DNA of 34,877 nucleotides from Guillardia theta CCMP2712 (taxonomy: Eukaryota > Protista > Cryptophyta): contig NW_005434571.1 in the NCBI RefSeq assembly GCF_000315625.1, positions 191,121 through 225,997 of the forward strand, given 5' to 3'. Below are positions 6,703 to 29,857 of this stretch, in pieces (the stretch's first letter is position 1; each line of letters starts with the position of its first letter). The notes under the pieces were generated by a model. It saw nothing but the letters and a program-made list of their open reading frames with translations, did no database searches and was not told the origin of the DNA. The position numbers were made by a program, and so were the translations under genes.

Positions 6703-7634
6703 CTTGAAACAACTGGTGTGACTTGAGCAATCTATCCCGTGTACAGCCTTCCTATCATTGAAAAGAAAGCCTCTCTTACTTGGGCATCTGCAACCTAAGA
6801 AGTCAGAACATGGTAACGGAGAATATAAAAGAAGGCAGACAATGACAAGTTAATCTCAACTTGATCTTTCACATTGTGCATGCACGCTGATATTCTAATT
6901 GGGCATAACGCATTTCCAAAACTGCATACAACAGTGACATTGGAATGCCCTGCCCTGCCCTGCCCATGGGAATGCCCTGCCCTGCCCTGCACTGCCCTTA
7001 CCACTCCTGCCCTTCGAGCCTCCTCCATTCCTCCCTTGACATAGTTCGCTCCTCCTTGTTCTTTCTTCGTGCCTCCCTCCCGCTCTTCTCGTCAAAGACA
7101 ACTGGCTTCCTACATACTTGTCGCTCTGACCCATTTTTAAAACAGTATGTGATTTTTACTCTGATCGAAAATTTGGATCGAAATACTTGTCCCACATTTG
7201 GAATCTAAATGATAGGTTGAAATAAAACAGGCACCTCATCAAACTTAAAACTATTGTAGGAGATATCCTTTAAAAAAACAAAAAGGTGAAAGGGCCACCA
7301 CTCGCCGTAGGGTCGCACTTGCGACTAGCTCGCACCCACCCCAGAAAGATACTGCTTACTTGCGGTTATAAGAGGGGTACTTCCGTGGGGGTGAAGCCCT
7401 TTAGAAATATAAAAATATTTAGTGTATTGCTGGTACTATCTCAAGGCTATCTAGCACCAAACAAATATTTTAAAAATTATCCATACAAATAACGAATTTA
7501 TCATATCCCAACAGCTCCCCCCAGTTTTCATTTTGTGATACCTTCAAATTCAAATTTGTGCTCAAATTCTCCAAAAAAGGAGTACTGTGAACCTTTCACG
7601 GCTCAAGTAGACTCGCACTCTCAATAGTTCAGTA

Positions 7635-8360
7635 GTGTGACCGACCCCCGGCGACGCCCGGCGCCGGCCGGGCCGGGCCGGGCCGCTGAGTCACGGCACG
7701 GGTCAGCCGCGGCAGTGTCACTCAGGCTGAAACTTCCGGGCCGCCCGACCCTGACCGGACTGTGGCACTGAGCCCTCAGTGATCCGATCCGCTGAAAGCA
7801 AATCCACACTCCGTGATCTTTTCAAACCTTTCAACTTGCCAAGTTTCCCGCCGGGCCGGGCCCGGTTTCAACTAACGGTTGGCAACTTGACTAGCGCAAT
7901 GGCCGGGCAGGCGCCGCCGAGTCAGCCGGACTCCGGGCCCGGCCCTCGGATAGTCTCTCAGCCTCAGGCTCAGCGCCTCGCAACCGCCGCAAGTTCGGAC
8001 TCCGGCGTCCCGGCGTGGTAAGCACTGCGCACTGCGGCGGCAGATCGGACAGTCATTCACACGCCGGGTACCGTAGTACCGTACGGTCCGATCGGACCGT
8101 ACGGTGACTCGTGATGGCCGCGCCCGCGATGATCGGTCAGTGTGATCGGACTTCACTGTCAATGCGGCAGTGCGGCTGGCAACCGTTCACGGGCCCCGCG
8201 TCGGACTGGGCCGGCGGCCGGCGGTCCGGGGCCGAGAGTTTCGGCCCGCCCGCCAGCCTCGCGGTCTGCCGGAGTCACTGATTCAGAGTCGGCGGCGCCG
8301 GCCGGGCCGCGCCGGGTGTGAGGCCCAAGTTCAACAGTGATTGTCCTCGACGGTACTGAA
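7635..8360. repeat. GC-rich scrambled low-complexity block 1
   Basis: Built from recurring short, often palindromic words (CCGG, GGCC, GGGCCC, GGTACC, CGTACG, GATCGG, TCAGTG/CACTGA, GACTC/GAGTC, AACTT/AAGTT) with no fixed period. Confidence 0.8.
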
Positions 8361-8444
8361 CTTTAACTTTACTTTGAGTAAACTTCCGAGTTACTCAGGC
8401 TTATCATATACACCATAGGTAAGAGATTCTCTAAGTGGGCTATT

Positions 8445-10337
8445 ATGCTGATCGCAAGAACATCCGGTCCTGAGCCTTGTTCCCAGCTCTGCCAGGAACA
8501 TAAGGTTCCCGGGTGGGGCAAACCGAGTTGTACGACGAACATGCAAGGGGAGCACGGTACATGGCTATCGTCAGGCCTGCAGCTGGGCATCGGGTACGTG
8601 GTGCTGGCAGAGCTGCTGGGGATAGAGGAGGTCTCCCAGCCTCCTCACGGCTCCTGCCTTGCTCGCCCTGGACGCTACTGCTCCTATCAGAACTTCAACC
8701 ACGATGTCTGTGATGCTGGTTACTTCTGTGAAGGAGGAAATGCGAGGCCCACGCCCTGCCCCGAAGGTTTCTTCTGTGCTGCAGGAGCTCATTCTCCGGC
8801 CAAGTGCCCCCAGGGTCACTACTGCGAGAAGCAGGCCAAGGCCCCAGTTCGCTGCCCTCCAGGCTTCCATTGCCCAGATCCCAATGGAGGACAAGCAAAA
8901 CCAACGCCCTGCCAGGAGGGCTTCTTCTGCGAGGGCTATACGAGCAAGCAGCAGGCTTGCCCAGCAGGGTTCTACTGCGAGAAGCAGGCCAAGGCTCCGG
9001 TCAGATGCCCTCCAGGCTTCCATTGCCCAGCTCAGTCAAGCAAGCCCACGCCCTGCCCCGAAGGTTTCTTCTGTGCTGCAGGAGCTCATTCTCCGGCCAA
9101 GTGCCCCCAGGGTCACTACTGCGAGAAGCAGGCCAAGGCCCCGGTCAGATGCCCTCCAGGCTTCCATTGCCCAGCTCAGTCAAGCAAGCCCACGCCCTGC
9201 CAGGAGGGCTTCTTCTGCGAGGGCTATACGAGCAAGCAGCAGGCTTGCCCAGCAGGGTTCTACTGCGAGAAGCAGGCCAAGGCTCCGGTCAGATGCCCTC
9301 CAGGCTTCCACTGCCCAGCTCAGTCAAGCAAGCCCACGCCCTGCCCCGAAGGTTTCTTCTGTGCTGCAGGAGCTCATTCTCCGGCCAAGTGCCCCCAGGG
9401 TCACTACTGCGAGAAGCAGGCCAAGGCCCCGGTCAGATGCCCTCCAGGCTTCCATTGCCCAGCTCAGTCAAGCAAGCCCACGCCCTGCCAGGAGGGCTTC
9501 TTCTGCGAGGGCTATACGAGCAAGCAGCAGGCTTGCCCAGCAGGGTTCTACTGCGAGAAGCAGGCCAAGGCTCCGGTCAGATGCCCCAAGGGCTTCTTTT
9601 GTGCTCGAGGAGCCTCCAAGCCTGAGCCTTGTCCAGTCCCACAACTTTGCTTGGGCGGAGCTTCGACCCCCAATGGTGTCATGAAGGATAACACGGGCAC
9701 CTTCCTCCTGGTGCTCCTCCTACTAGTCGCCTTTGCCTTTGCCCTCCGACGGAAGCTCGGCAGCATGACTACCACCTGCAGCATTTGCTTCGACTCCAAG
9801 CCTGTCTTGCTGTGCGTCCCGTGCCGTCAGTCTCACCATGTCTGCGCCGAGTGCCTGGAGGCGCTAGTGCTGGCGAATGCTGGAGAGGCTGAGCAGCAGC
9901 TGCACAACCGACAAATACCCGAGCACTGGATGAAATGCGTCGTGCCAGAGTGCCGGCAGCCCTACAGTGACATGTGGATGTTGTTGCTGCTTACTTCACA
10001 GACTCATCGACGGCATCTGAGTATCAAAGAGAAGATACGGGAGGGTCGTCGGGAGCAGCAGCGACAGGAAACGCTCCTTGTCCAGCACAACATGGATGCG
10101 AATGATGTTGCTGCTATACGGTTTCTTCAGCGGGAGTACAGCAGGCTACTGCAATGCCCTCGATGCGGGACTGGGCCAGTTGTCGTTCATGGTTGTTCAG
10201 ACCTTGCGATGCATCAAGGCGAGGCGAGTGGTTCTGGTCGGATCAACAACTCGTGTCGCCACTGTGGCTTTTTTGCAAAGGAGATGGGGGAATGGCCTAC
10301 ATGGATTCCTCCGCAGTCTCTCAACGCAGCTCGTTGA
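8445..10337 (+). CDS. Uninterrupted ORF: Cys-rich repeat ectodomain + TM + RING finger + second Cys/His module; putative membrane E3 ubiquitin ligase
   Basis: 630-aa ORF. It has 20 CPxGxYC-type 16-aa repeats, a TM (TFLLVLLLLVAFAFAL followed by RRK), a RING (CSIC...CRQSHHVCAEC...CVVPEC) and QCPRCGTGP...GCSDLAMH...CRHCGFF...WPTW. True start uncertain (ATG 8445 or 8540). Confidence 0.85.
   Translation: MLIARTSGPEPCSQLCQEHKVPGWGKPSCTTNMQGEHGTWLSSGLQLGIGYVVLAELLGIEEVSQPPHGSCLARPGRYCSYQNFNHDVCDAGYFCEGGNARPTPCPEGFFCAAGAHSPAKCPQGHYCEKQAKAPVRCPPGFHCPDPNGGQAKPTPCQEGFFCEGYTSKQQACPAGFYCEKQAKAPVRCPPGFHCPAQSSKPTPCPEGFFCAAGAHSPAKCPQGHYCEKQAKAPVRCPPGFHCPAQSSKPTPCQEGFFCEGYTSKQQACPAGFYCEKQAKAPVRCPPGFHCPAQSSKPTPCPEGFFCAAGAHSPAKCPQGHYCEKQAKAPVRCPPGFHCPAQSSKPTPCQEGFFCEGYTSKQQACPAGFYCEKQAKAPVRCPKGFFCARGASKPEPCPVPQLCLGGASTPNGVMKDNTGTFLLVLLLLVAFAFALRRKLGSMTTTCSICFDSKPVLLCVPCRQSHHVCAECLEALVLANAGEAEQQLHNRQIPEHWMKCVVPECRQPYSDMWMLLLLTSQTHRRHLSIKEKIREGRREQQRQETLLVQHNMDANDVAAIRFLQREYSRLLQCPRCGTGPVVVHGCSDLAMHQGEASGSGRINNSCRHCGFFAKEMGEWPTWIPPQSLNAAR
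8709..9670 (+). repeat. Coding tandem repeat, 48-nt units in a 288-nt higher-order unit x3
   Basis: ACGCCCTGCCCCGAAGG recurs at 8751, 9048 and 9336 (spacing 297 and 288). Copies are nearly identical at DNA level. Confidence 0.95.
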
Positions 10338-10743
10338 GCGGCTCGTCCTGTCAACTCAGCACGCAAGAGCAGAGGAGAGAGCTCCTTCTCCACACGATCA
10401 GCTGGGCGCTCTTGCAGCTGGGGAGAAGACATGGTTGGACGGCAATCCATGAAAGGTCGGAATGTATGTAGATAGCAGGAGGAATGTGGGAGGGTCAGCG
10501 ATAGAGTCGCAGCCACCCTTGATCATCGTATTGTAAAGTCTCACATCGGATGAAGGTAAAAGGCACTCGCTCGGTAAGGCAGGGAGGATCGATGGAGACT
10601 TGAAGCATTGAGATGATGCAATGAAGGTCTTTTCACACACTTCTCGTTCCTCCCACTAGTCCACCAGCGTCTCCCCTCCTCGTGTTCATCCTCCCTTCCA
10701 TCATGTTGCCAGGATTAGCGAGTGTCCTAGCTGCAGCTGCTTC

Positions 10744-12170
10744 TTAATCCTTGAGTGCCCCGTGCGCCACTCGGGTTCCTCTTGCTGTAGCGGTGCTATA
10801 CCCGGCTCATTTCACGCGAAGCTCCTTCCTTAGAGGAGGAGGAGGAGGAGGAGGAGGAGGAGAAGAAGAAGCTCTTGATGCACTTGACAACTGAGACGAT
10901 AACCATCATGGCGCAGGCAAAGGCAAACATGACGCAGATTCCTAGCTGCTCGAAAAAGACGGTGAGTAGGAATTCTGAGGACAAGGAAGACAAGGCAGGA
11001 GGAAGGAGGACAGAGGTCTTGAGACACTCTGAGCGGTACTCACCAAGAGTTGCGCCTGCGCGTTGGACTGAACGCCATCAGCACCAAACGTGTATGCCGT
11101 AAGGTCTTGCTTGAGGCGCCACTGCCACAACGTTCAGAGAGAGGAAAGACTTATCCTGCCCTTCACCTTGCCGCCAATGCAGACCTGCGGCTGACCAGAG
11201 CCGCTCCCGCACCTGGTGGCTGACTCAGCACACCTGAACAAGCATGTCAGACGTGCCGAGGGCAGGAGGGGAGAGTTACTCTCTGCAGCCTCCATCATAG
11301 CATGTGCCATTCCAGTCGATGGCATTGCTAGTGAAGCTAAACCTGCTCGAGATTATTCATCAAGAAGACGGCCTCTATGATCGCATCATGCCACCCGTAG
11401 GTGTCTCCAGTCACAGATTCACCACAGGCACCGTAGTTGAGGAGGTTGTCTTGGATTGTCTGAGAGAGTCTGAGAAAATGCGGCCAACTGCAGGAAGATT
11501 ACCTTGCTGCAAACTTGAACGAACGTCTCAGTGCTGGTGAACAACGTCGATCCTGAGCACTTGTCTCCGATGCACTCTTGTGCTTTCGGGTTGAATGAGT
11601 TGATCTTTCCGCAAAATTTCTTTTGGTCTGTAGCAAGGATACTTGATGCCACTTCGGAGAAAATTTCTACCCTGCCATGGCTGTCAGCGACGTGCAATGT
11701 AGCAACATCGTCCACCCGTTCGCATTCTTCTGCGACTTGATAGCTACCCCCTTCTTCAAGTACGCCTCTGCCACACACCCCCCTCTGATATCTGAGCTGT
11801 ACGACTTGCACATGCTGGGGATGCGCAGCCCCTGGTACGCCTGAGAGAGGAGCTCGACTCTCTTCTTGTCGTCCGAGGCGATGGAGAGGGTAGGGGAGAA
11901 CTTGGTGAGCTCGAAATCAGCAGCACAGTACTTGCCAACTGGACAGTCGCAGTCATCCATGCACTGCACGCAGATGCCCTTTGCTTCTAGGTTCTTGTTG
12001 TCAGTCGATTTCATCCTCCAGTACACGTTGCAGATCGGGTGCGAGGTGTCGTTGCAGTCGCTGTGCTTCTGGCATGCCTTGTACGAGTCTGCAGCTGCAG
12101 GATCGGAGAGCAGGGAGAGGAGGAGGAGGAGGAGGAGGAGAGGAAGGGAGGTAGAGAGCCCTGCCTGCAT
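10744..12170 (-). CDS. Multi-exon Cys-rich type I membrane protein, unknown function
   Basis: Signal peptide MQAGLSTSLPLLLLLLLLSLLSDPAAA, then CQKHSDC...CVQCMDDCDCPVGKYC. Later exons give DWNGTCYDGGCRECAESATRC...VCIGGK and a C-terminal TM, LGICVMFAFACAMMVIVSVV. Last exon and stop are less certain. Confidence 0.7.
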
Positions 12171-24994: not shown

Positions 24995-25055
24995 CAGCGG
25001 CAGGAGGAGCAAGTGATGCTCCCCTCTCGTTGCCTGCCGCTGCTACTCGTTTCCC
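24995..25055 (-). promoter_or_regulatory. -1 programmed ribosomal frameshift signal
   Basis: In-frame G GGA AAC heptamer (25055-25049), 6-nt spacer containing the gag stop, then a 10-bp perfect stem CAGCGGCAGG/CCTGCCGCTG with inner GGAGCA/TGCTCC hairpin. Confidence 0.75.
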
Positions 25056-26588
25056 GCACGCGTCGCGAGCGGTTGAAGAGCAGCTAAAAGCTGAACATGC
25101 TGTTCATGCTGGGTTGCCATGAGTTTCTCATGGCGCTCCTGCTGGAGGGCGACTTCGCGCTTGTACTGCTCGCAGTCCGGCTTGATGTGACCCGGTTCTT
25201 GACAGTAAAAACAACGGATGGATTTCTGCTTGCGCTGGTTTTCTTTACCGTTGGACTTCTTCTTGTTCTGCCCACCGTTGGCTTTGGCCTTAGTGTGCGA
25301 AGAGGTCTGCGCAGCGTTAGCAGCAGCTGAGTTAGGCTGCTTAGACACTGTTAGCGGTTCACCATCGTCCAGAAGAGCTGTGATGAAAGTGACTAGGCGA
25401 GAGAACATGTCTTCTCCGTGTCCATACTGACTGCGATAAATCGTAAACCATGTGTGGATAGACGTGCGCGTCGGCGTATGCGAAAATCCCTTGATGAATT
25501 TCCGGAGTGGCTGATCGTTGAAGTACAGGATGGCGGACCCTACCTGCGATTCGAGCGTTGCGAAGAGTGTCGTGGCGCGAGTCAAGTACGCCCAGGCGGA
25601 TTCGTTGGGCTGCTGCTTGAGCTGATCAAGCTGAGTCTGATAGTTCTTGGCTTGCCGCATTGGGGCTAGACACGAACATAGATGAGTTGAAAATTCATCC
25701 CATTTAAGCTTGTTGATGGCCTCGAGACTCTTTCCGTACTTACGTTCTACCACGACCATCACTTCGTTGGTGAACAACGGCGTGATGCTCTTCACCCATT
25801 TGCGAGTTGGGATCTCTTGAGCGATTAATTCGCGGTTGCACTGACGAAGGAATTCTTCGACAGAGCGAGGATCAGCAAAACCTTTGTACATCGGAATGCG
25901 GCTGGAATTGAAACTCTTGGAGTTCGTTAGCACATTCACGAGAGTCCGATTGGAGAGGACTGGTTCCTGATCAGAGGATTCAGCGCTAGCTGATTCCTCA
26001 GCTGAATAGATATCAGCGTTAGCATCTTGCAGGGTAACTTTCCGTGCGAGATGCGGGAGCTCTGGTGTTGCAGCAGCGTCGGCTGTCGCAAATTCGTCGG
26101 CAGCATTGGCGAGCATGTGGAAACGCTCGCCGGCCCTGCATGGTGTCAGCCAGGAGGGCACACATTCGACGAAGAAGGAGAAGAGCTCGGTCCTGCGCCA
26201 CTGGCGAGGACATGACGGGGTCGGATGAAAAATTTTCCGAGCTTGGCAGACGTACCGATGTTGCAGGGGAGGCTGCTCTCTGAGTTGCCTCCTCTGATCG
26301 CAGAATACTTCGCAAGGGAGTATCCCTCTTGTTTCGGGCCCGTTGATCCGCGCTAGACAGCGCTTCACGTTGTACATCTCCATCCCTATAAGTTTGAGTC
26401 AAAGATCCACTGGTCTGACTCGGAGAAAGCTGCTGCTGCTGCAGCTGCAGCCGCTCGCTCCATTCGACTTCTTCCTCAGAACTCTCTTCAGCAATTTCTG
26501 TTTGAAATGCTCCTGATTGCTTAGATCGAGGTTGAGGGCCCCTTTCCGGCTGAGGTTTCTTTCCTCCTCTTCCTTGTTTCGAGGTCAT
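25043..26588 (-). CDS. gag: Retrotransposon Gag (capsid + CCHC zinc knuckle), split by an apparent frameshift near 26130
   Basis: CFYCQEPGHIKPDC (CX2CX4HX4C) and capsid-like ...SVEEFLRQC...LKWDEFSTHL...LKQQPNESAWAYLTRATTL...FIKG. ATG 26588 directly after the PBS opens a frame that overlaps ORF 25043-26383. Confidence 0.85.
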
Positions 26589-27940: not shown

Positions 27941-29857
27941 CTAGTAGACTCTGGAAGTAGTCCGTGCACTAACGGCTGACATTCTGCTGACGTTCTCATT
28001 CTCTACAATGACAGAGTTCGGGCGACAGCTGGTGCAAGCCTCCGGTCCGATGGTCGGCTTGTACTGCGTGGAGCTGCACTTGGTGCAGGGGCCACCGTTG
28101 GGTCCGGTGTATCCGGGCTTGCACTGACAGCTTGTTGCAGAGAGGGAGTTGACAGCGCTGATAGAGTTGGCCGGGCATTCAAGGCAGCTCGTGCCCGACT
28201 TGTAGTAGTTGGCGAGGCATTGGCAATCGGCAAAGGAGGTGCTGCCGGCCTGTGCATAGGAGTGTAGAGGGCAAGGCAAGCAGTCCTTAAAGAGCGACGA
28301 TACAGTCGTCTTGTAGGTGTTTTCAGGGCACTGCACACAAGTCGGGTCGTAGTAATTGGGAAGGTACTGTCCTGCCGGGCAGCCGTTCTTCTGGCAGATT
28401 CCGTTGACGATGCTGAAGCCGGTCTGGCACTGGCAGCCCTCGACAAACATGGTTGCGGGAGAGGAGGTGGAGGCGTTGGGGCAACGGTTGCAGACGATCT
28501 CCGCGCTGACAGTTGCATAGCCCTCGGTGTTCAAAGACATGAGGACCTTGCTCACCGTTAGTTGGTAGTTGACCTCATAGACGTCAATGTTGCCGTCGAA
28601 GGAATAGATGTCGGTGCCATACTTTACCTTCATGGCACCCCCTGCAATGTCGAGAACCTTGATCCTCACGCTGGCAAACGCATTGAGCCACACGGTGCAG
28701 GAGGCGCCGGATAGCGTGAAACTGGTGGTGTAGCCGCGGTAGAGCACGCTGGAGCAGCTGCCCTCTCCAAAGACATGGATGGGGTCCGTGAAGCCGTAGT
28801 AGTTGGCAGGGCAGCCGCACCCCACCCTTGTCGGGTAGTATCCATAGTTGGTAGGGCAAGCCTGGCAGGTGTTGTCGCTGGTGGCATACTTGCCTATGGC
28901 ACAGTTCTCACACTTCCCGTTGGTCTCGATGGTGTTGTTAGAGCAAAGGCATTGAGAAATGCCCTCTGCCGCGTACTTGGAGACCCTCCCTGAAGGGCAG
29001 GGGTAGCAGAAGCCGGGTTCGGAGCCGGATCTGTAGTAATTGATGGGGCAGACTGAGCAGGCGCTGCTGTTGTAGCCCGTGTGGCCTTTGAGGCACTGGC
29101 ATTGGAAGACGCTGTTGCTGTAGGGCGGAGCGTAGGAGTTCAGAGGGCAATCGATGCACTCTCTCGTGGTGAGATCGAGGTACTTGCCATTGTCGCATCC
29201 AAGACACACCCCGGGGCTTGCCTCATAGGCGTAGTCCGCACACAACACGCAGGTCTCTACGGTAAAGACCCCCTGCACTGCCGAGGTGTAGTTCTGAGGG
29301 CAAGTCCCAAGGTCGTACATCTGGCACTGGATGTCCTGTGTGAAAGTGCAGTCGGCCACCTTCTGATAGCCAAAGGGGCAGGAGGCAGAGCAGGGGTTGC
29401 ACCTGACATTCTGAGTGTCCGAGCATTCTGAGACGCGGTAGTGGTTGGCGGGACAGGCAGCACAGTCCTTGCACAGCGTGTTGTTGTACTGGCTGCAAGG
29501 GGAGGCAAGGTACTGGTTTGGACCGCAGGCAGAGCACGACTTGCATACGAGGTCCTGATAAGGGTTGCAGGGAGACGCAATATATTCCGTGGGCAGGCAG
29601 CTAGACTTGCAGGGGATGCAGTAGGTGTCATCGTACCTTTGGCTCCCCTTGCCACAGGGCCTGAAGGGGTCAGCAAAGAAGCCATTGTCGCAGATGGAGC
29701 ACTGCTTGCAGGTGTTGATGAATGTCTCACAGATGGAGAAGTGATTGTCAGGGCACTGCAGACAGTCTACGCATACCGTGTCCTTATTGGCGTTGCAAAC
29801 CTCCGCCAGCCCCTTGTTATCCTTTTTGCTGCAGCCCTTGCACAGGACTGCATTCAA
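27941..29857 (-). pseudogene. Intronless Cys-rich surface-protein fragment (TNFR-like repeats, then GCC2_GCC3/ephrin-receptor-like repeats)
   Basis: 638 codons with repeated CxxCxxCxxxxYxxxxCxxxxDxxC and CxxCPxNxYxxxxSxxxxxCxC. It lacks an ATG (starts at TTG), signal peptide and TM, and both ends look frameshifted or truncated. Confidence 0.75.

What the first reader, a model, noticed from the sequence alone, without database searches (positions are those of the whole stretch)
8445..10337. Receptor-like ubiquitin ligase: repeat ectodomain wired directly to RING + atypical Zn module
Seen: 20 Cys repeats, one TM with a basic stop-transfer, a cytosolic RING resembling RBR RING1, a helical linker and one CPRC-GP-GC-DL-H-CxxC-WPxW module. 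Known: RBR ligases are RING1-IBR-RING2 and usually soluble; characterised receptor-type membrane E3s use PA, Ig or EGF/partner ectodomains. Inference: a single-chain sensor-ligase with a shortened RBR-like core in which HGCSDL may supply the RING2-type catalytic Cys. Its intronless CDS in an intron-dense genome suggests retroposition or domain shuffling. Candidate algal surface or immune receptor.
Basis: partly seen in the sequence, partly recalled or inferred. Interest (0 to 1): 0.75.

Follow-up and report, generated by a model that had tools for sequence, protein, structure and literature searches.

The report
Membrane ubiquitin ligase with RBR-like core
A gene of the alga Guillardia theta joins a cysteine-repeat outer domain, through one membrane span, to a probable ubiquitin-ligase unit that is widespread in protists but undescribed: a parkin-type RING finger plus a small one-zinc domain with an invariant spare cysteine that may carry ubiquitin.

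Summary
Window 8445-10337(+) is one 630-codon ORF with 19 regular 16-residue CxxGxxC repeats, one membrane span followed by RRK, a C3HC4 RING, a helical linker and a C-terminal Cys/His module.

- **A conserved cassette.** RING, linker and module recur together. A profile search found 1,096 cluster representatives, from cryptophytes, euglenids, oomycetes and dinoflagellates, behind kinase, CCCH, Arm, UBA or membrane/Ephrin-like regions.
- **The RING is of RBR RING1 type.** Parkin scores E 1.8e-5 by profile; RNF216 scores Z 10.9 by structure. The first 37 structural matches are all RBR RING1 domains.
- **No IBR is present,** so this is not a canonical RBR.
- **The end module matches no Pfam family above its cut-off and no PDB sequence.** It reads as a one-zinc ribbon (C571, C574, C604, C607). 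C584 and N602 are invariant and H590 nearly so (150/152), and none is needed for zinc. C584 aligns in register with the RBR catalytic cysteine, but only weakly.

My best reading (about 0.5) is a membrane-anchored, two-step RBR-like ligase. A plain RING ligase with an accessory zinc ribbon is the main rival. Domain shuffling is supported; retroposition is not. The receptor or immune role is untested. Earlier notes of this scan report other receptor-like RING ligases in this genome.

The parts
8445..10337 (+). Uninterrupted ORF, 630 codons plus TGA
   Evidence: the frame is fixed by cassette homology and by dN/dS below 1 against the paralog L002
8541..8543 (+). Probable true start codon (M33)
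   Evidence: In the paralog L002 the upstream ATG is cut off from this Met by a frameshift and a stop. Protein similarity in frame starts just before it
8574..8633 (+). Weakly hydrophobic N-terminal segment (residues 44-63), a candidate signal peptide
   Evidence: KD17 1.5-1.7; conserved in L002. Inferred, not tested with a signal-peptide predictor
8655..9650 (+). Cys-repeat ectodomain (C71 to C402): 42 Cys, 19 regular 16-residue CxxGxxC-x9 units
   Evidence: At least 122 matches to the same repeat lie in giant ORFs of the same genome. There is no Pfam hit; Ephrin_rec_like is a weak language-model lead only
8747..9586 (+). 288-bp tandem DNA repeat, 2.9 copies at 96% identity (six protein repeats per unit): a recent expansion
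   Evidence: The paralog L002 has only about 7 repeats
9696..9746 (+). Membrane span, residues 418-434
   Evidence: KD17 maximum 2.81
9747..9755 (+). RRK basic stop-transfer, placing the C-terminal part in the cytosol
   Evidence: sequence; positive-inside rule (established knowledge)
9777..9953 (+). RBR-type RING1 (C445, C448, C460, H464, C467, C470, C498, C503)
   Evidence: The eight ligands are invariant or nearly so in 62 sequences. Profile against PDB: parkin E 1.8e-5, RNF216 1.5e-4. VIA Z 10.9 to RNF216 RING1; rows 1-37 are all RBR RING1. hhalign against the G. theta RNF216-like group gives probability 85%
9969..10136 (+). Helical linker (residues 509-564), without Cys/His ligands; it stands where the IBR lies in RBRs
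   Evidence: AF2 model mae3f9b5781a0: helices at cassette residues 70-76, 79-110 and 113-125, block pLDDT 83-98
10146..10310 (+). C-terminal one-zinc module (residues 568-622); inferred zinc ligands C571, C574, C604, C607
   Evidence: Invariant columns. Generic zinc-ribbon Pfam models hit 36 of 65 members; IBR_1 hits 8 of 65, below its cut-off. No PDB sequence match
10194..10196 (+). C584, the candidate ubiquitin-accepting cysteine
   Evidence: 152 of 152 conserved. Nine residues after CPxC, as in the Rcat sequences of this genome. hhalign puts it on the Rcat catalytic Cys
10212..10214 (+). H590, the candidate general base
   Evidence: 150 of 152 conserved
10248..10250 (+). N602, invariant; a possible third member of a Cys-His-Asn set
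   Evidence: 152 of 152 conserved. The role is inferred
10338..10484 (+). 3' untranslated region; transcript ends at about 10467-10484
   Evidence: Contigs of three runs end at 10467, 10480 and 10484, with zero depth from 10494 to 11900

Best explanation
The gene encodes a type-I membrane protein of the cryptophyte Guillardia theta. A disulfide-rich stalk of about 20 sixteen-residue Cys repeats faces outwards or into a lumen. One membrane span follows. Ten residues further on, in the cytosol, begins a conserved 190-residue ligase cassette.

Proposed mechanism:
1. The cassette's RBR-type RING1 binds a ubiquitin-charged E2.
2. RING1 lacks a conserved linchpin residue, so ubiquitin does not pass directly to a lysine.
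3. Instead it goes to the invariant C584 of the C-terminal one-zinc module. H590 and N602 assist.
4. From C584 it passes to a substrate near the membrane.

The helical linker takes the place of the IBR. This would make the cassette a shortened, RBR-derived two-step ligase.

**Shown:** the ORF, the repeats, the membrane span, the RING1 kinship, conservation of the cassette and of C584/H590/N602, purifying selection, and transcription of most of the ORF.

**Inferred:** topology, zinc ligands, the thioester step, the substrates, and any ligand for the ectodomain.
For: **Gene reality**
- One ORF.
- dN/dS 0.45 and 0.16 against a paralog that keeps the same ecto-TM-cassette layout.
- Contigs of runs that cover genes but not intergenic DNA lie on 8582-9577 and 9821-10467.

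**The cassette is a unit**
- 1,096 representatives at E <= 1e-3 and 495 at E <= 1e-10, nearly all matching the profile end to end.
- Members occur in Hanusia, Peranema, Aphanomyces and Polarella.
- The genome has exactly four copies.

**Link to ubiquitin**
- UBA or CUE domains occur beside the cassette in 4 of 100 members.

**RING1 kinship**
-.

**E2 surface kept, linchpin not**
- V/I/L stands at C1+2 in 58 of 62 sequences.
- The residue after the last zinc ligand is mostly S/A/E/G.

**E2 docking**
- Weak support: score 0.57, best control 0.00.
- That mark was reached by 51 of 78 solved complexes and 2 of 108 mismatched pairs. At 0.60 or under it was reached by only 5 of those 78, and by all 4 mismatches that passed (of 180).
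- The runs agree in at least 94% of contacts; partner pLDDT is at least 89.

**End module**
- There are six near-invariant Cys/His for what reads as a single four-ligand zinc ribbon, so C584 and H590 are spare.
- The CPxC-x9-C spacing equals that of this genome's Rcat sequences.
- hhalign aligns them in register: score 19.6, P 0.0016, reached by 1 of 200 column shuffles.
- The model is confident in the module, with block pLDDT 88-94.
Against: - No direct evidence of catalysis.
- The module matches no PDB sequence.
- hhalign probability for Rcat is only 16%. A comparison with RZ fingers scores about the same, on another part of the module.
- Cys patterns align easily by chance.
- The zinc ligand set is inferred from conservation and zinc-ribbon HMM hits, not from coordinates.
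- In the window's own protein the residue after the last RING ligand is Arg, so direct RING-type transfer is not excluded for this copy.
- The E2 tested is UBE2K-like, and the pass is weak. It may also reflect the model's memory of solved RING-E2 complexes.
- No listed RNA contig spans 9578-9820. The 5' end is unresolved.
Confidence: 0.5

Rival explanations
1. A plain membrane-anchored RING-type ligase. RING1 activates E2~ubiquitin for direct transfer. The C-terminal module is a structural or binding zinc ribbon (for substrate, ubiquitin or lipid), and C584/H590 serve binding or a second metal site rather than catalysis.
For: The RING has all eight ligands and the hydrophobic E2-contact residue. 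This copy has Arg after the last ligand. The module's best Pfam resemblances are generic zinc ribbons. It matches no Rcat in PDB by sequence. E2 docking has weak support (0.57 against 0.00, with the counts given under the best explanation).
Against: Every close structural and sequence relative of this RING is an RBR RING1, which in known cases hands ubiquitin to a Cys. The linchpin position is not conserved across the family. C584 is more strictly conserved (152 of 152) than a binding residue need be, and N602 is equally invariant. Only six conserved Cys/His cannot build two four-ligand zinc sites.
Confidence: 0.33
2. A non-catalytic scaffold or pseudo-ligase. The cassette is a protein-interaction module that recruits E2s or ubiquitinated partners to membranes, kinases and RNA-binding proteins, without ligase activity of its own.
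For: No activity data exist. The cassette is combined with many signalling domains, as adaptors often are.
Against: All zinc ligands and the E2-contact residue are kept over a very wide range of protists. UBA and CUE neighbours fit an enzyme of the ubiquitin system.
Confidence: 0.1
3. An untranslated or decaying duplicate: the long ORF is kept open by chance or by the repeat structure.
For: The exact products are absent from the public protein collection. RNA depth is low. The repeat array is young.
Against: dN/dS is below 1 in both halves at dS about 0.3. A 630-codon open frame persists at 61% GC. All cassette invariants are intact. Contigs cover the ORF but not its flanks.
Confidence: 0.04

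Closest known systems
RBR ligases (parkin, RNF216/TRIAD3, RNF144A, HOIP, HOIL-1, ARIH1/2)
   Same: RING1 with its trailing helix matches by sequence profile (parkin E 1.8e-5, RNF216 1.5e-4) and by fold (RNF216 Z 10.9, rmsd 2.2 A over 84 residues; the first 37 rows are all RBR RING1). A later zinc domain carries CPxC-x9-Cys as in Rcat. Some RBRs (RNF19A/B, RNF144A/B, RNF217) also have hydrophobic anchors (PMC4021871).
   Different: There is no IBR/BRcat; helices stand in its place. The end module has six conserved Cys/His rather than the eight ligands plus catalytic Cys of Rcat. It carries its own N-x-C-x2-C-G-F-F...W-x2-W signature and reaches no IBR or Rcat Pfam cut-off. Known membrane RBRs have no ectodomain.
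RZ finger of RNF213 and ZNFX1 (Pfam PF20173)
   Same: It is a small zinc domain with a non-ligand Cys nucleophile and a His base, preceded by a helix. It works downstream of an E2-binding RING-like domain in an RBR-like relay (bioRxiv 10.1101/2025.10.14.682297). The logic is the same as proposed here.
   Different: PF20173 finds three other loci in this genome but none of the four cassette loci. The hhalign resemblance is limited to the second CxxC knuckle. The first knuckle is CPxGH in RZ and CPxC here.
PA-TM-RING receptor-like ligases (GRAIL/RNF128, RNF13, ZNRF4 and relatives)
   Same: Signal peptide, a lumenal or extracellular binding domain, one membrane span and a cytosolic RING in one chain; the outer domain selects substrates (PMC4021871).
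   Different: The outer domain here is a Cys-repeat stalk, not a PA domain. The RING is RBR-type, not RING-H2, and is followed by the Cys/His module.
Ephrin-receptor-like / TNFR-type cysteine-rich repeats
   Same: Extracellular disulfide repeats with CPxG motifs. Two other cassette proteins (P0055, P0078) have true Ephrin_rec_like ectodomains beyond a membrane span.
   Different: The window's 16-residue unit reaches no Pfam model. The kinship rests on weak language-model scores of 0.78-0.83. In P0055 and P0078 the order is reversed, with the cassette first.

Membership tests
RBR ligase (RING1-IBR-Rcat) | RING1: C3HC4 cross-brace of the RBR subtype with a trailing helix | tested here: met
RBR ligase (RING1-IBR-Rcat) | IBR (BRcat) two-zinc domain between RING1 and Rcat | tested here: not met
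   Residues 509-564 are helical and carry no conserved Cys/His. No IBR Pfam hit appears among the 25 most frequent families in the 100 full-length members scanned at E <= 0.001
RBR ligase (RING1-IBR-Rcat) | Rcat: two zinc sites plus a non-ligand catalytic Cys | tested here: inconclusive
   Only six conserved Cys/His. Cys in register: hhalign P 0.0016, probability 16%, reached by 1 of 200 shuffles. IBR_1 hits 8 of 65 members below its cut-off. No PDB sequence hit
RBR ligase (RING1-IBR-Rcat) | E3~ubiquitin thioester intermediate | not testable with these tools
   Needs biochemistry
Canonical RING-type E3 | Eight zinc ligands and a hydrophobic E2-contact residue | tested here: met
Canonical RING-type E3 | Conserved linchpin Arg/Lys/Asn after the last ligand | tested here: not met
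   The family column is S 17, A 12, E 8, G 5, T 5, D 4 of 62. The window's own copy has Arg
Canonical RING-type E3 | Binds an E2 | tested here: inconclusive
   Weak support: 0.57 against a best control of 0.00, with the calibration counts quoted in the report
RZ finger (PF20173) | Match to the family model | tested here: not met
   The PF20173 search of the genome finds C15, C102 and C68, not the cassette loci
PA-TM-RING | PA domain outside, membrane span, RING inside | tested here: not met
   No PA hit. The membrane span and RING are present
Ephrin_rec_like (PF07699) ectodomain | Match to the family model | tested here: not met
   No hit at E <= 1; only Atlas leads under 0.9
Pfam zf-RING_14 (PF17978) | Score over the gathering cut-off of 26.6 bits | tested here: inconclusive
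   The window's protein scores 16.8 bits. The paralog L003 scores 31.6 and its Hanusia ortholog 35.5

The most novel reading that the evidence does not exclude
The cassette is a new class of cysteine-relay ubiquitin ligase. An RBR-type RING1 is joined by a helical arm to a minimal one-zinc domain with a Cys-His-Asn active site. The class is widespread in protists and is wired to kinases, RNA-binding fingers and, as here, directly to a cell-surface repeat domain. On that reading, what happens outside the cell could set ubiquitination inside without any adaptor.
Probability: 0.4. Interest if true: 0.85.

Novelty: new variant of a known kind. Interest (0 to 1): 0.68.

Why it matters
Only a few ligase classes are known to pass ubiquitin through their own cysteine (HECT, RBR, RCR, RZ). 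The two most recent were found in single animal proteins. This cassette would add a compact and very common protist type that shows how far the RBR core can be reduced.

It comes with a clear test: residue C584, three zinc ions per cassette, and a Cys-only E2.

The fusion to a surface repeat domain, together with independent fusions to Ephrin-like ectodomains and to kinases in other protists, points to a signalling output in algae, oomycetes and dinoflagellates that has not been studied.

The module has no Pfam family, so these proteins are currently named 'hypothetical' or only 'protein kinase'.

Tried and rejected
- **Word-index search.** The search with residues 440-630 found nothing. That blank was due to the method: the profile search then found 1,096 representatives.
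- **First AF2 model.** The four-sequence model left the end module under pLDDT 60. The 62-sequence model replaced it.
- **End module against PDB sequences.** No hits at E <= 10.
- **Fold searches of the whole model.** Foldseek, VIA wide, VIA second look and Atlas were all filled by RING1.
- **ESM Atlas by features.** The module scored 0.81-0.87 (some IBR-carrying giant-virus clusters) and the ectodomain 0.78-0.83 (Ephrin_rec_like). These are leads only.
- **Viral contigs.** Two alignments were too diverse to search with. A closer set gave no relatives, so a giant-virus link is not supported.
- **Building an Rcat profile.** Two word-index searches gave only 4 and 3 relatives, so the Rcat profile has just 12 sequences.
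- **RZ-finger kinship.** Rejected at HMM level.
- **Retroposition.** Similarity to the paralog ends 29 nt before ATG 8445 and 6 nt after the stop, and no A-run follows.
- **Literature.** Searches for zf-RING_14, PF17978, RBR-like zinc ribbons and RBR evolution in protists found no description of this cassette.
- **Split genes.** L004 (RING and the rest in different frames) and the RZ fingers of L040 and L041 (cut by an intron) were used piece by piece.
Full report
**Organism and locus**

The window is contig C103:191121-225997 of an 87.1-Mb, 669-contig genome. A protein of Guillardia theta CCMP2712 (GUITHDRAFT_146109) lies on a contig of 221,806 bases, the length of this genome's C117. The genome is therefore that cryptophyte alga.

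**Observation**

The ORF 8445-10337(+) is real.

- **Ectodomain.** It has 42 Cys, spaced 6 and 10 residues apart in alternation. That gives 19 regular 16-residue CxxGxxC-x9 units plus degenerate end units.
- **Repeat DNA.** Three near-identical 288-bp DNA units (96% identity) show a recent expansion. The paralog on C60 (L002, 77% identical in the cytosolic part) has only about seven repeats.
- **Membrane span.** Residues 418-434 form the only strong hydrophobic segment and are followed by RRK.
- **Frame.** The other long ORFs over the repeats, in other frames, are by-products of the repeat. The coding frame is fixed by homology of the cassette and by dN/dS of 0.45 (cytosolic) and 0.16 (N-terminal) at dS about 0.3.

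**Transcript**

- Contigs of three runs cover a neighbouring gene deeply (to about 6780). They leave 6954-8546 and 10494-11900 empty, which is the pattern of RNA.
- They lie on 8582-9577 in short pieces broken by the repeat, and on 9821-10467 in one unspliced piece. Ends fall at 10467, 10480 and 10484.
- No listed contig bridges 9578-9820. The single-chain layout therefore rests on the open frame and on its conservation in the paralog.

The 5' end is open.

- In L002 the ATG matching 8445 is separated from the conserved Met (M33, 8541) by a frameshift and a stop. M33 is thus the likelier start.
- Similarity to L002 starts at 8416, inside AGGTAAGA. A pyrimidine-rich ...TTCCCAG lies at about 8489. 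A short 5' intron is possible but unproven.
- The exact 630-aa and 598-aa products, and that of L002, are not in the public protein collection.

**The cytosolic part is a conserved cassette**

- The genome has four copies. Two have the Cys-repeat and membrane layout (window and C60). One follows CCCH fingers and ends in a UBA-like tail (C70). One follows a kinase-like region (C264).
- A profile of these copies found 1,096 cluster representatives at E <= 1e-3 and 495 at E <= 1e-10. Nearly all match from the first RING cysteine to the final W-x2-W-D-G.
- Named members come from Hanusia phi, Peranema, Aphanomyces astaci and Polarella glacialis. The rest are unnamed metagenome proteins.
- Of 100 members scanned, 17 carry a protein kinase domain. 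Others carry CCCH fingers, Arm repeats, NYN RNase, SAM, UBA (3) or CUE (1) domains. No IBR appears among the 25 most frequent families.
- Many have membrane spans.
- Two members (P0055, P0078) read cassette-UBA-membrane span-Ephrin_rec_like repeats. A cysteine-rich outer domain has therefore been joined to this cassette at least twice, in opposite orders.

**RING**

- The eight ligands are invariant or nearly so.
- A 62-sequence profile hits only parkin and RNF216 in PDB at E < 1e-3 (26 distinct sequences, best 1.8e-5). The matches cover the RING and the helix after it. The next hit, RNF25, is at E 0.14.
- The AF2 model (pLDDT 91.8, pTM 0.70) matches RNF216 RING1 at Z 10.9 (rmsd 2.2 A, 84 residues).
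- Rows 1-37 of the second-look search are all RBR RING1 domains. Other RINGs begin at Z 5.6. The Foldseek-free search agrees (top 11 rows, Z 8.7-6.2), and so does the Atlas shape search.
- hhalign against this genome's RNF216-like proteins gives 85% probability.
- The family keeps V/I/L at the E2-contact position but has no conserved linchpin residue. This fits RBR RING1 domains, which are known not to promote direct discharge (established knowledge of RBR mechanism).
- A docking test with an E2 of this genome gave weak support: 0.57 against a best control of 0.00.
  - That mark was reached by 51 of 78 solved complexes and 2 of 108 mismatches.
  - At 0.60 or under it was reached by only 5 of those 78, and by all 4 passing mismatches of 180.
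  - The runs agree in at least 94% of contacts; partner pLDDT is at least 89.
  - The pass may reflect memory of solved RING-E2 complexes.

**Linker and end module**

Residues 509-564 are helical and carry no ligands, so there is no IBR.

The last 60 residues are the family's hallmark. Conservation in 152 instances:

| Residue | Conserved |
|---|---|
| C571 | 152/152 |
| C574 | 151/152 |
| G577-P578 | 152/152 |
| C584 | 152/152 |
| L587 | 150/152 |
| H590 | 150/152 |
| N602 | 152/152 |
| C604 | 151/152 |
| C607 | 151/152 |
| W617 | 149/152 |
| W620 | 149/152 |

- No Pfam family reaches its cut-off. Generic zinc ribbons hit 36 of 65 members, and IBR_1 hits 8 of 65 (best E 7.7e-4).
- Six conserved Cys/His cannot build two four-ligand sites. 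The two CxxC knuckles are the natural ligands of one zinc. That leaves C584 and H590 free, with N602 beside them.
- The spacing CPxC-x9-C is that of this genome's Rcat sequences.
- hhalign puts C584 on the Rcat catalytic Cys: score 19.6, P 0.0016, probability 16%, reached by 1 of 200 column shuffles.
- This is suggestive only. RZ fingers score about the same on the second knuckle, and PF20173 does not find the cassette.
- The RZ finger shows that a one-zinc domain with a Cys/His pair can act as the second step of an RBR-like relay (bioRxiv 10.1101/2025.10.14.682297).

**Mechanism and odds**

- At about 0.5, I read the protein as a membrane-anchored two-step ligase: E2~ubiquitin on RING1, thioester on C584, then transfer to a substrate near the membrane.
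- At about 0.33, it is a plain RING ligase with an accessory zinc ribbon.
- The ectodomain's repeat recurs at least 122 times in giant ORFs of the same genome, with open frames up to 9,018 aa. It may bind such surface proteins or an outside ligand. That suggestion, and any immune role, is speculation.

**Comparison and novelty**

- Single-chain 'receptor-like' ligases are known (PA-TM-RING family), and some RBRs are membrane-anchored (PMC4021871).
- Earlier notes of this scan describe other receptor-like RING ligases in this genome. I did not check them.
- What is new is the cassette: RBR RING1 without an IBR, plus a module I found in no family library, structure or paper.
- I class it as a new variant of the RBR kind, not a member of it, because the IBR test failed and the Rcat test is inconclusive.

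Noticed in passing
G000 C80:386346-405930 and C394:1111-8575 (L007-L016); also C103:30417 (L006), C70:74006 (L005), C8:289685 (L017): There is a tandem array of roughly 3.9-kb units. Each has an open frame of about 400-1,200 aa ending in a lone canonical Rcat (CxxC-x9-GCxHMxC...FCWxC). No RING1 or IBR lies in the 260 residues before it. It looks like a multi-copy family of 'Rcat-only' proteins.
   Followed up: partly
G000 C41 (open frame 9,018 aa), C134 (8,567 aa), C28 (3,757 aa), C398 (3,304 aa), C44 (2,874 aa): Giant uninterrupted ORFs are built from the same 16-residue CxxGxxC repeat as the finding's ectodomain (at least 122 matches). They are probably huge surface or periplast proteins.
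   Followed up: no
window 27941-29857 (-): A 638-aa ORF is rich in Cys, with Ephrin_rec_like and TNFR_c6 Pfam hits over their cut-offs. It is a second, different cysteine-repeat ectodomain 18 kb downstream and looks like one exon of a larger gene.
   Followed up: partly
window 25043-26383 (-): A 446-aa ORF carries a zinc knuckle (over its cut-off) and a retrotransposon gag match just under its cut-off. It is probably a retroelement remnant.
   Followed up: no
window 8416-8489 and L002 738-811: Similarity between the two paralogs begins exactly at AGGTAAGA. About 70 nt later comes ...TTGTTCCCAG. This is a donor-like and acceptor-like pair conserved in both copies, upstream of the conserved Met, so a short 5' intron or conserved leader is possible.
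   Followed up: partly
G000 C15:147514, C102:226715, C68:71986 (L040-L042): The genome has three RZ fingers (PF20173). One lies in a 4,100-aa open frame, which suggests an RNF213- or ZNFX1-like giant in a cryptophyte. Two are cut by an intron inside the finger.
   Followed up: no
L004 (G000 C264:11452-14823), about 1460-1492: In the kinase-like cassette gene, the RING and the rest of the cassette lie in different frames about 30 nt apart. The cause may be a very short intron, a frameshift or an assembly error.
   Followed up: no
   Followed up: partly
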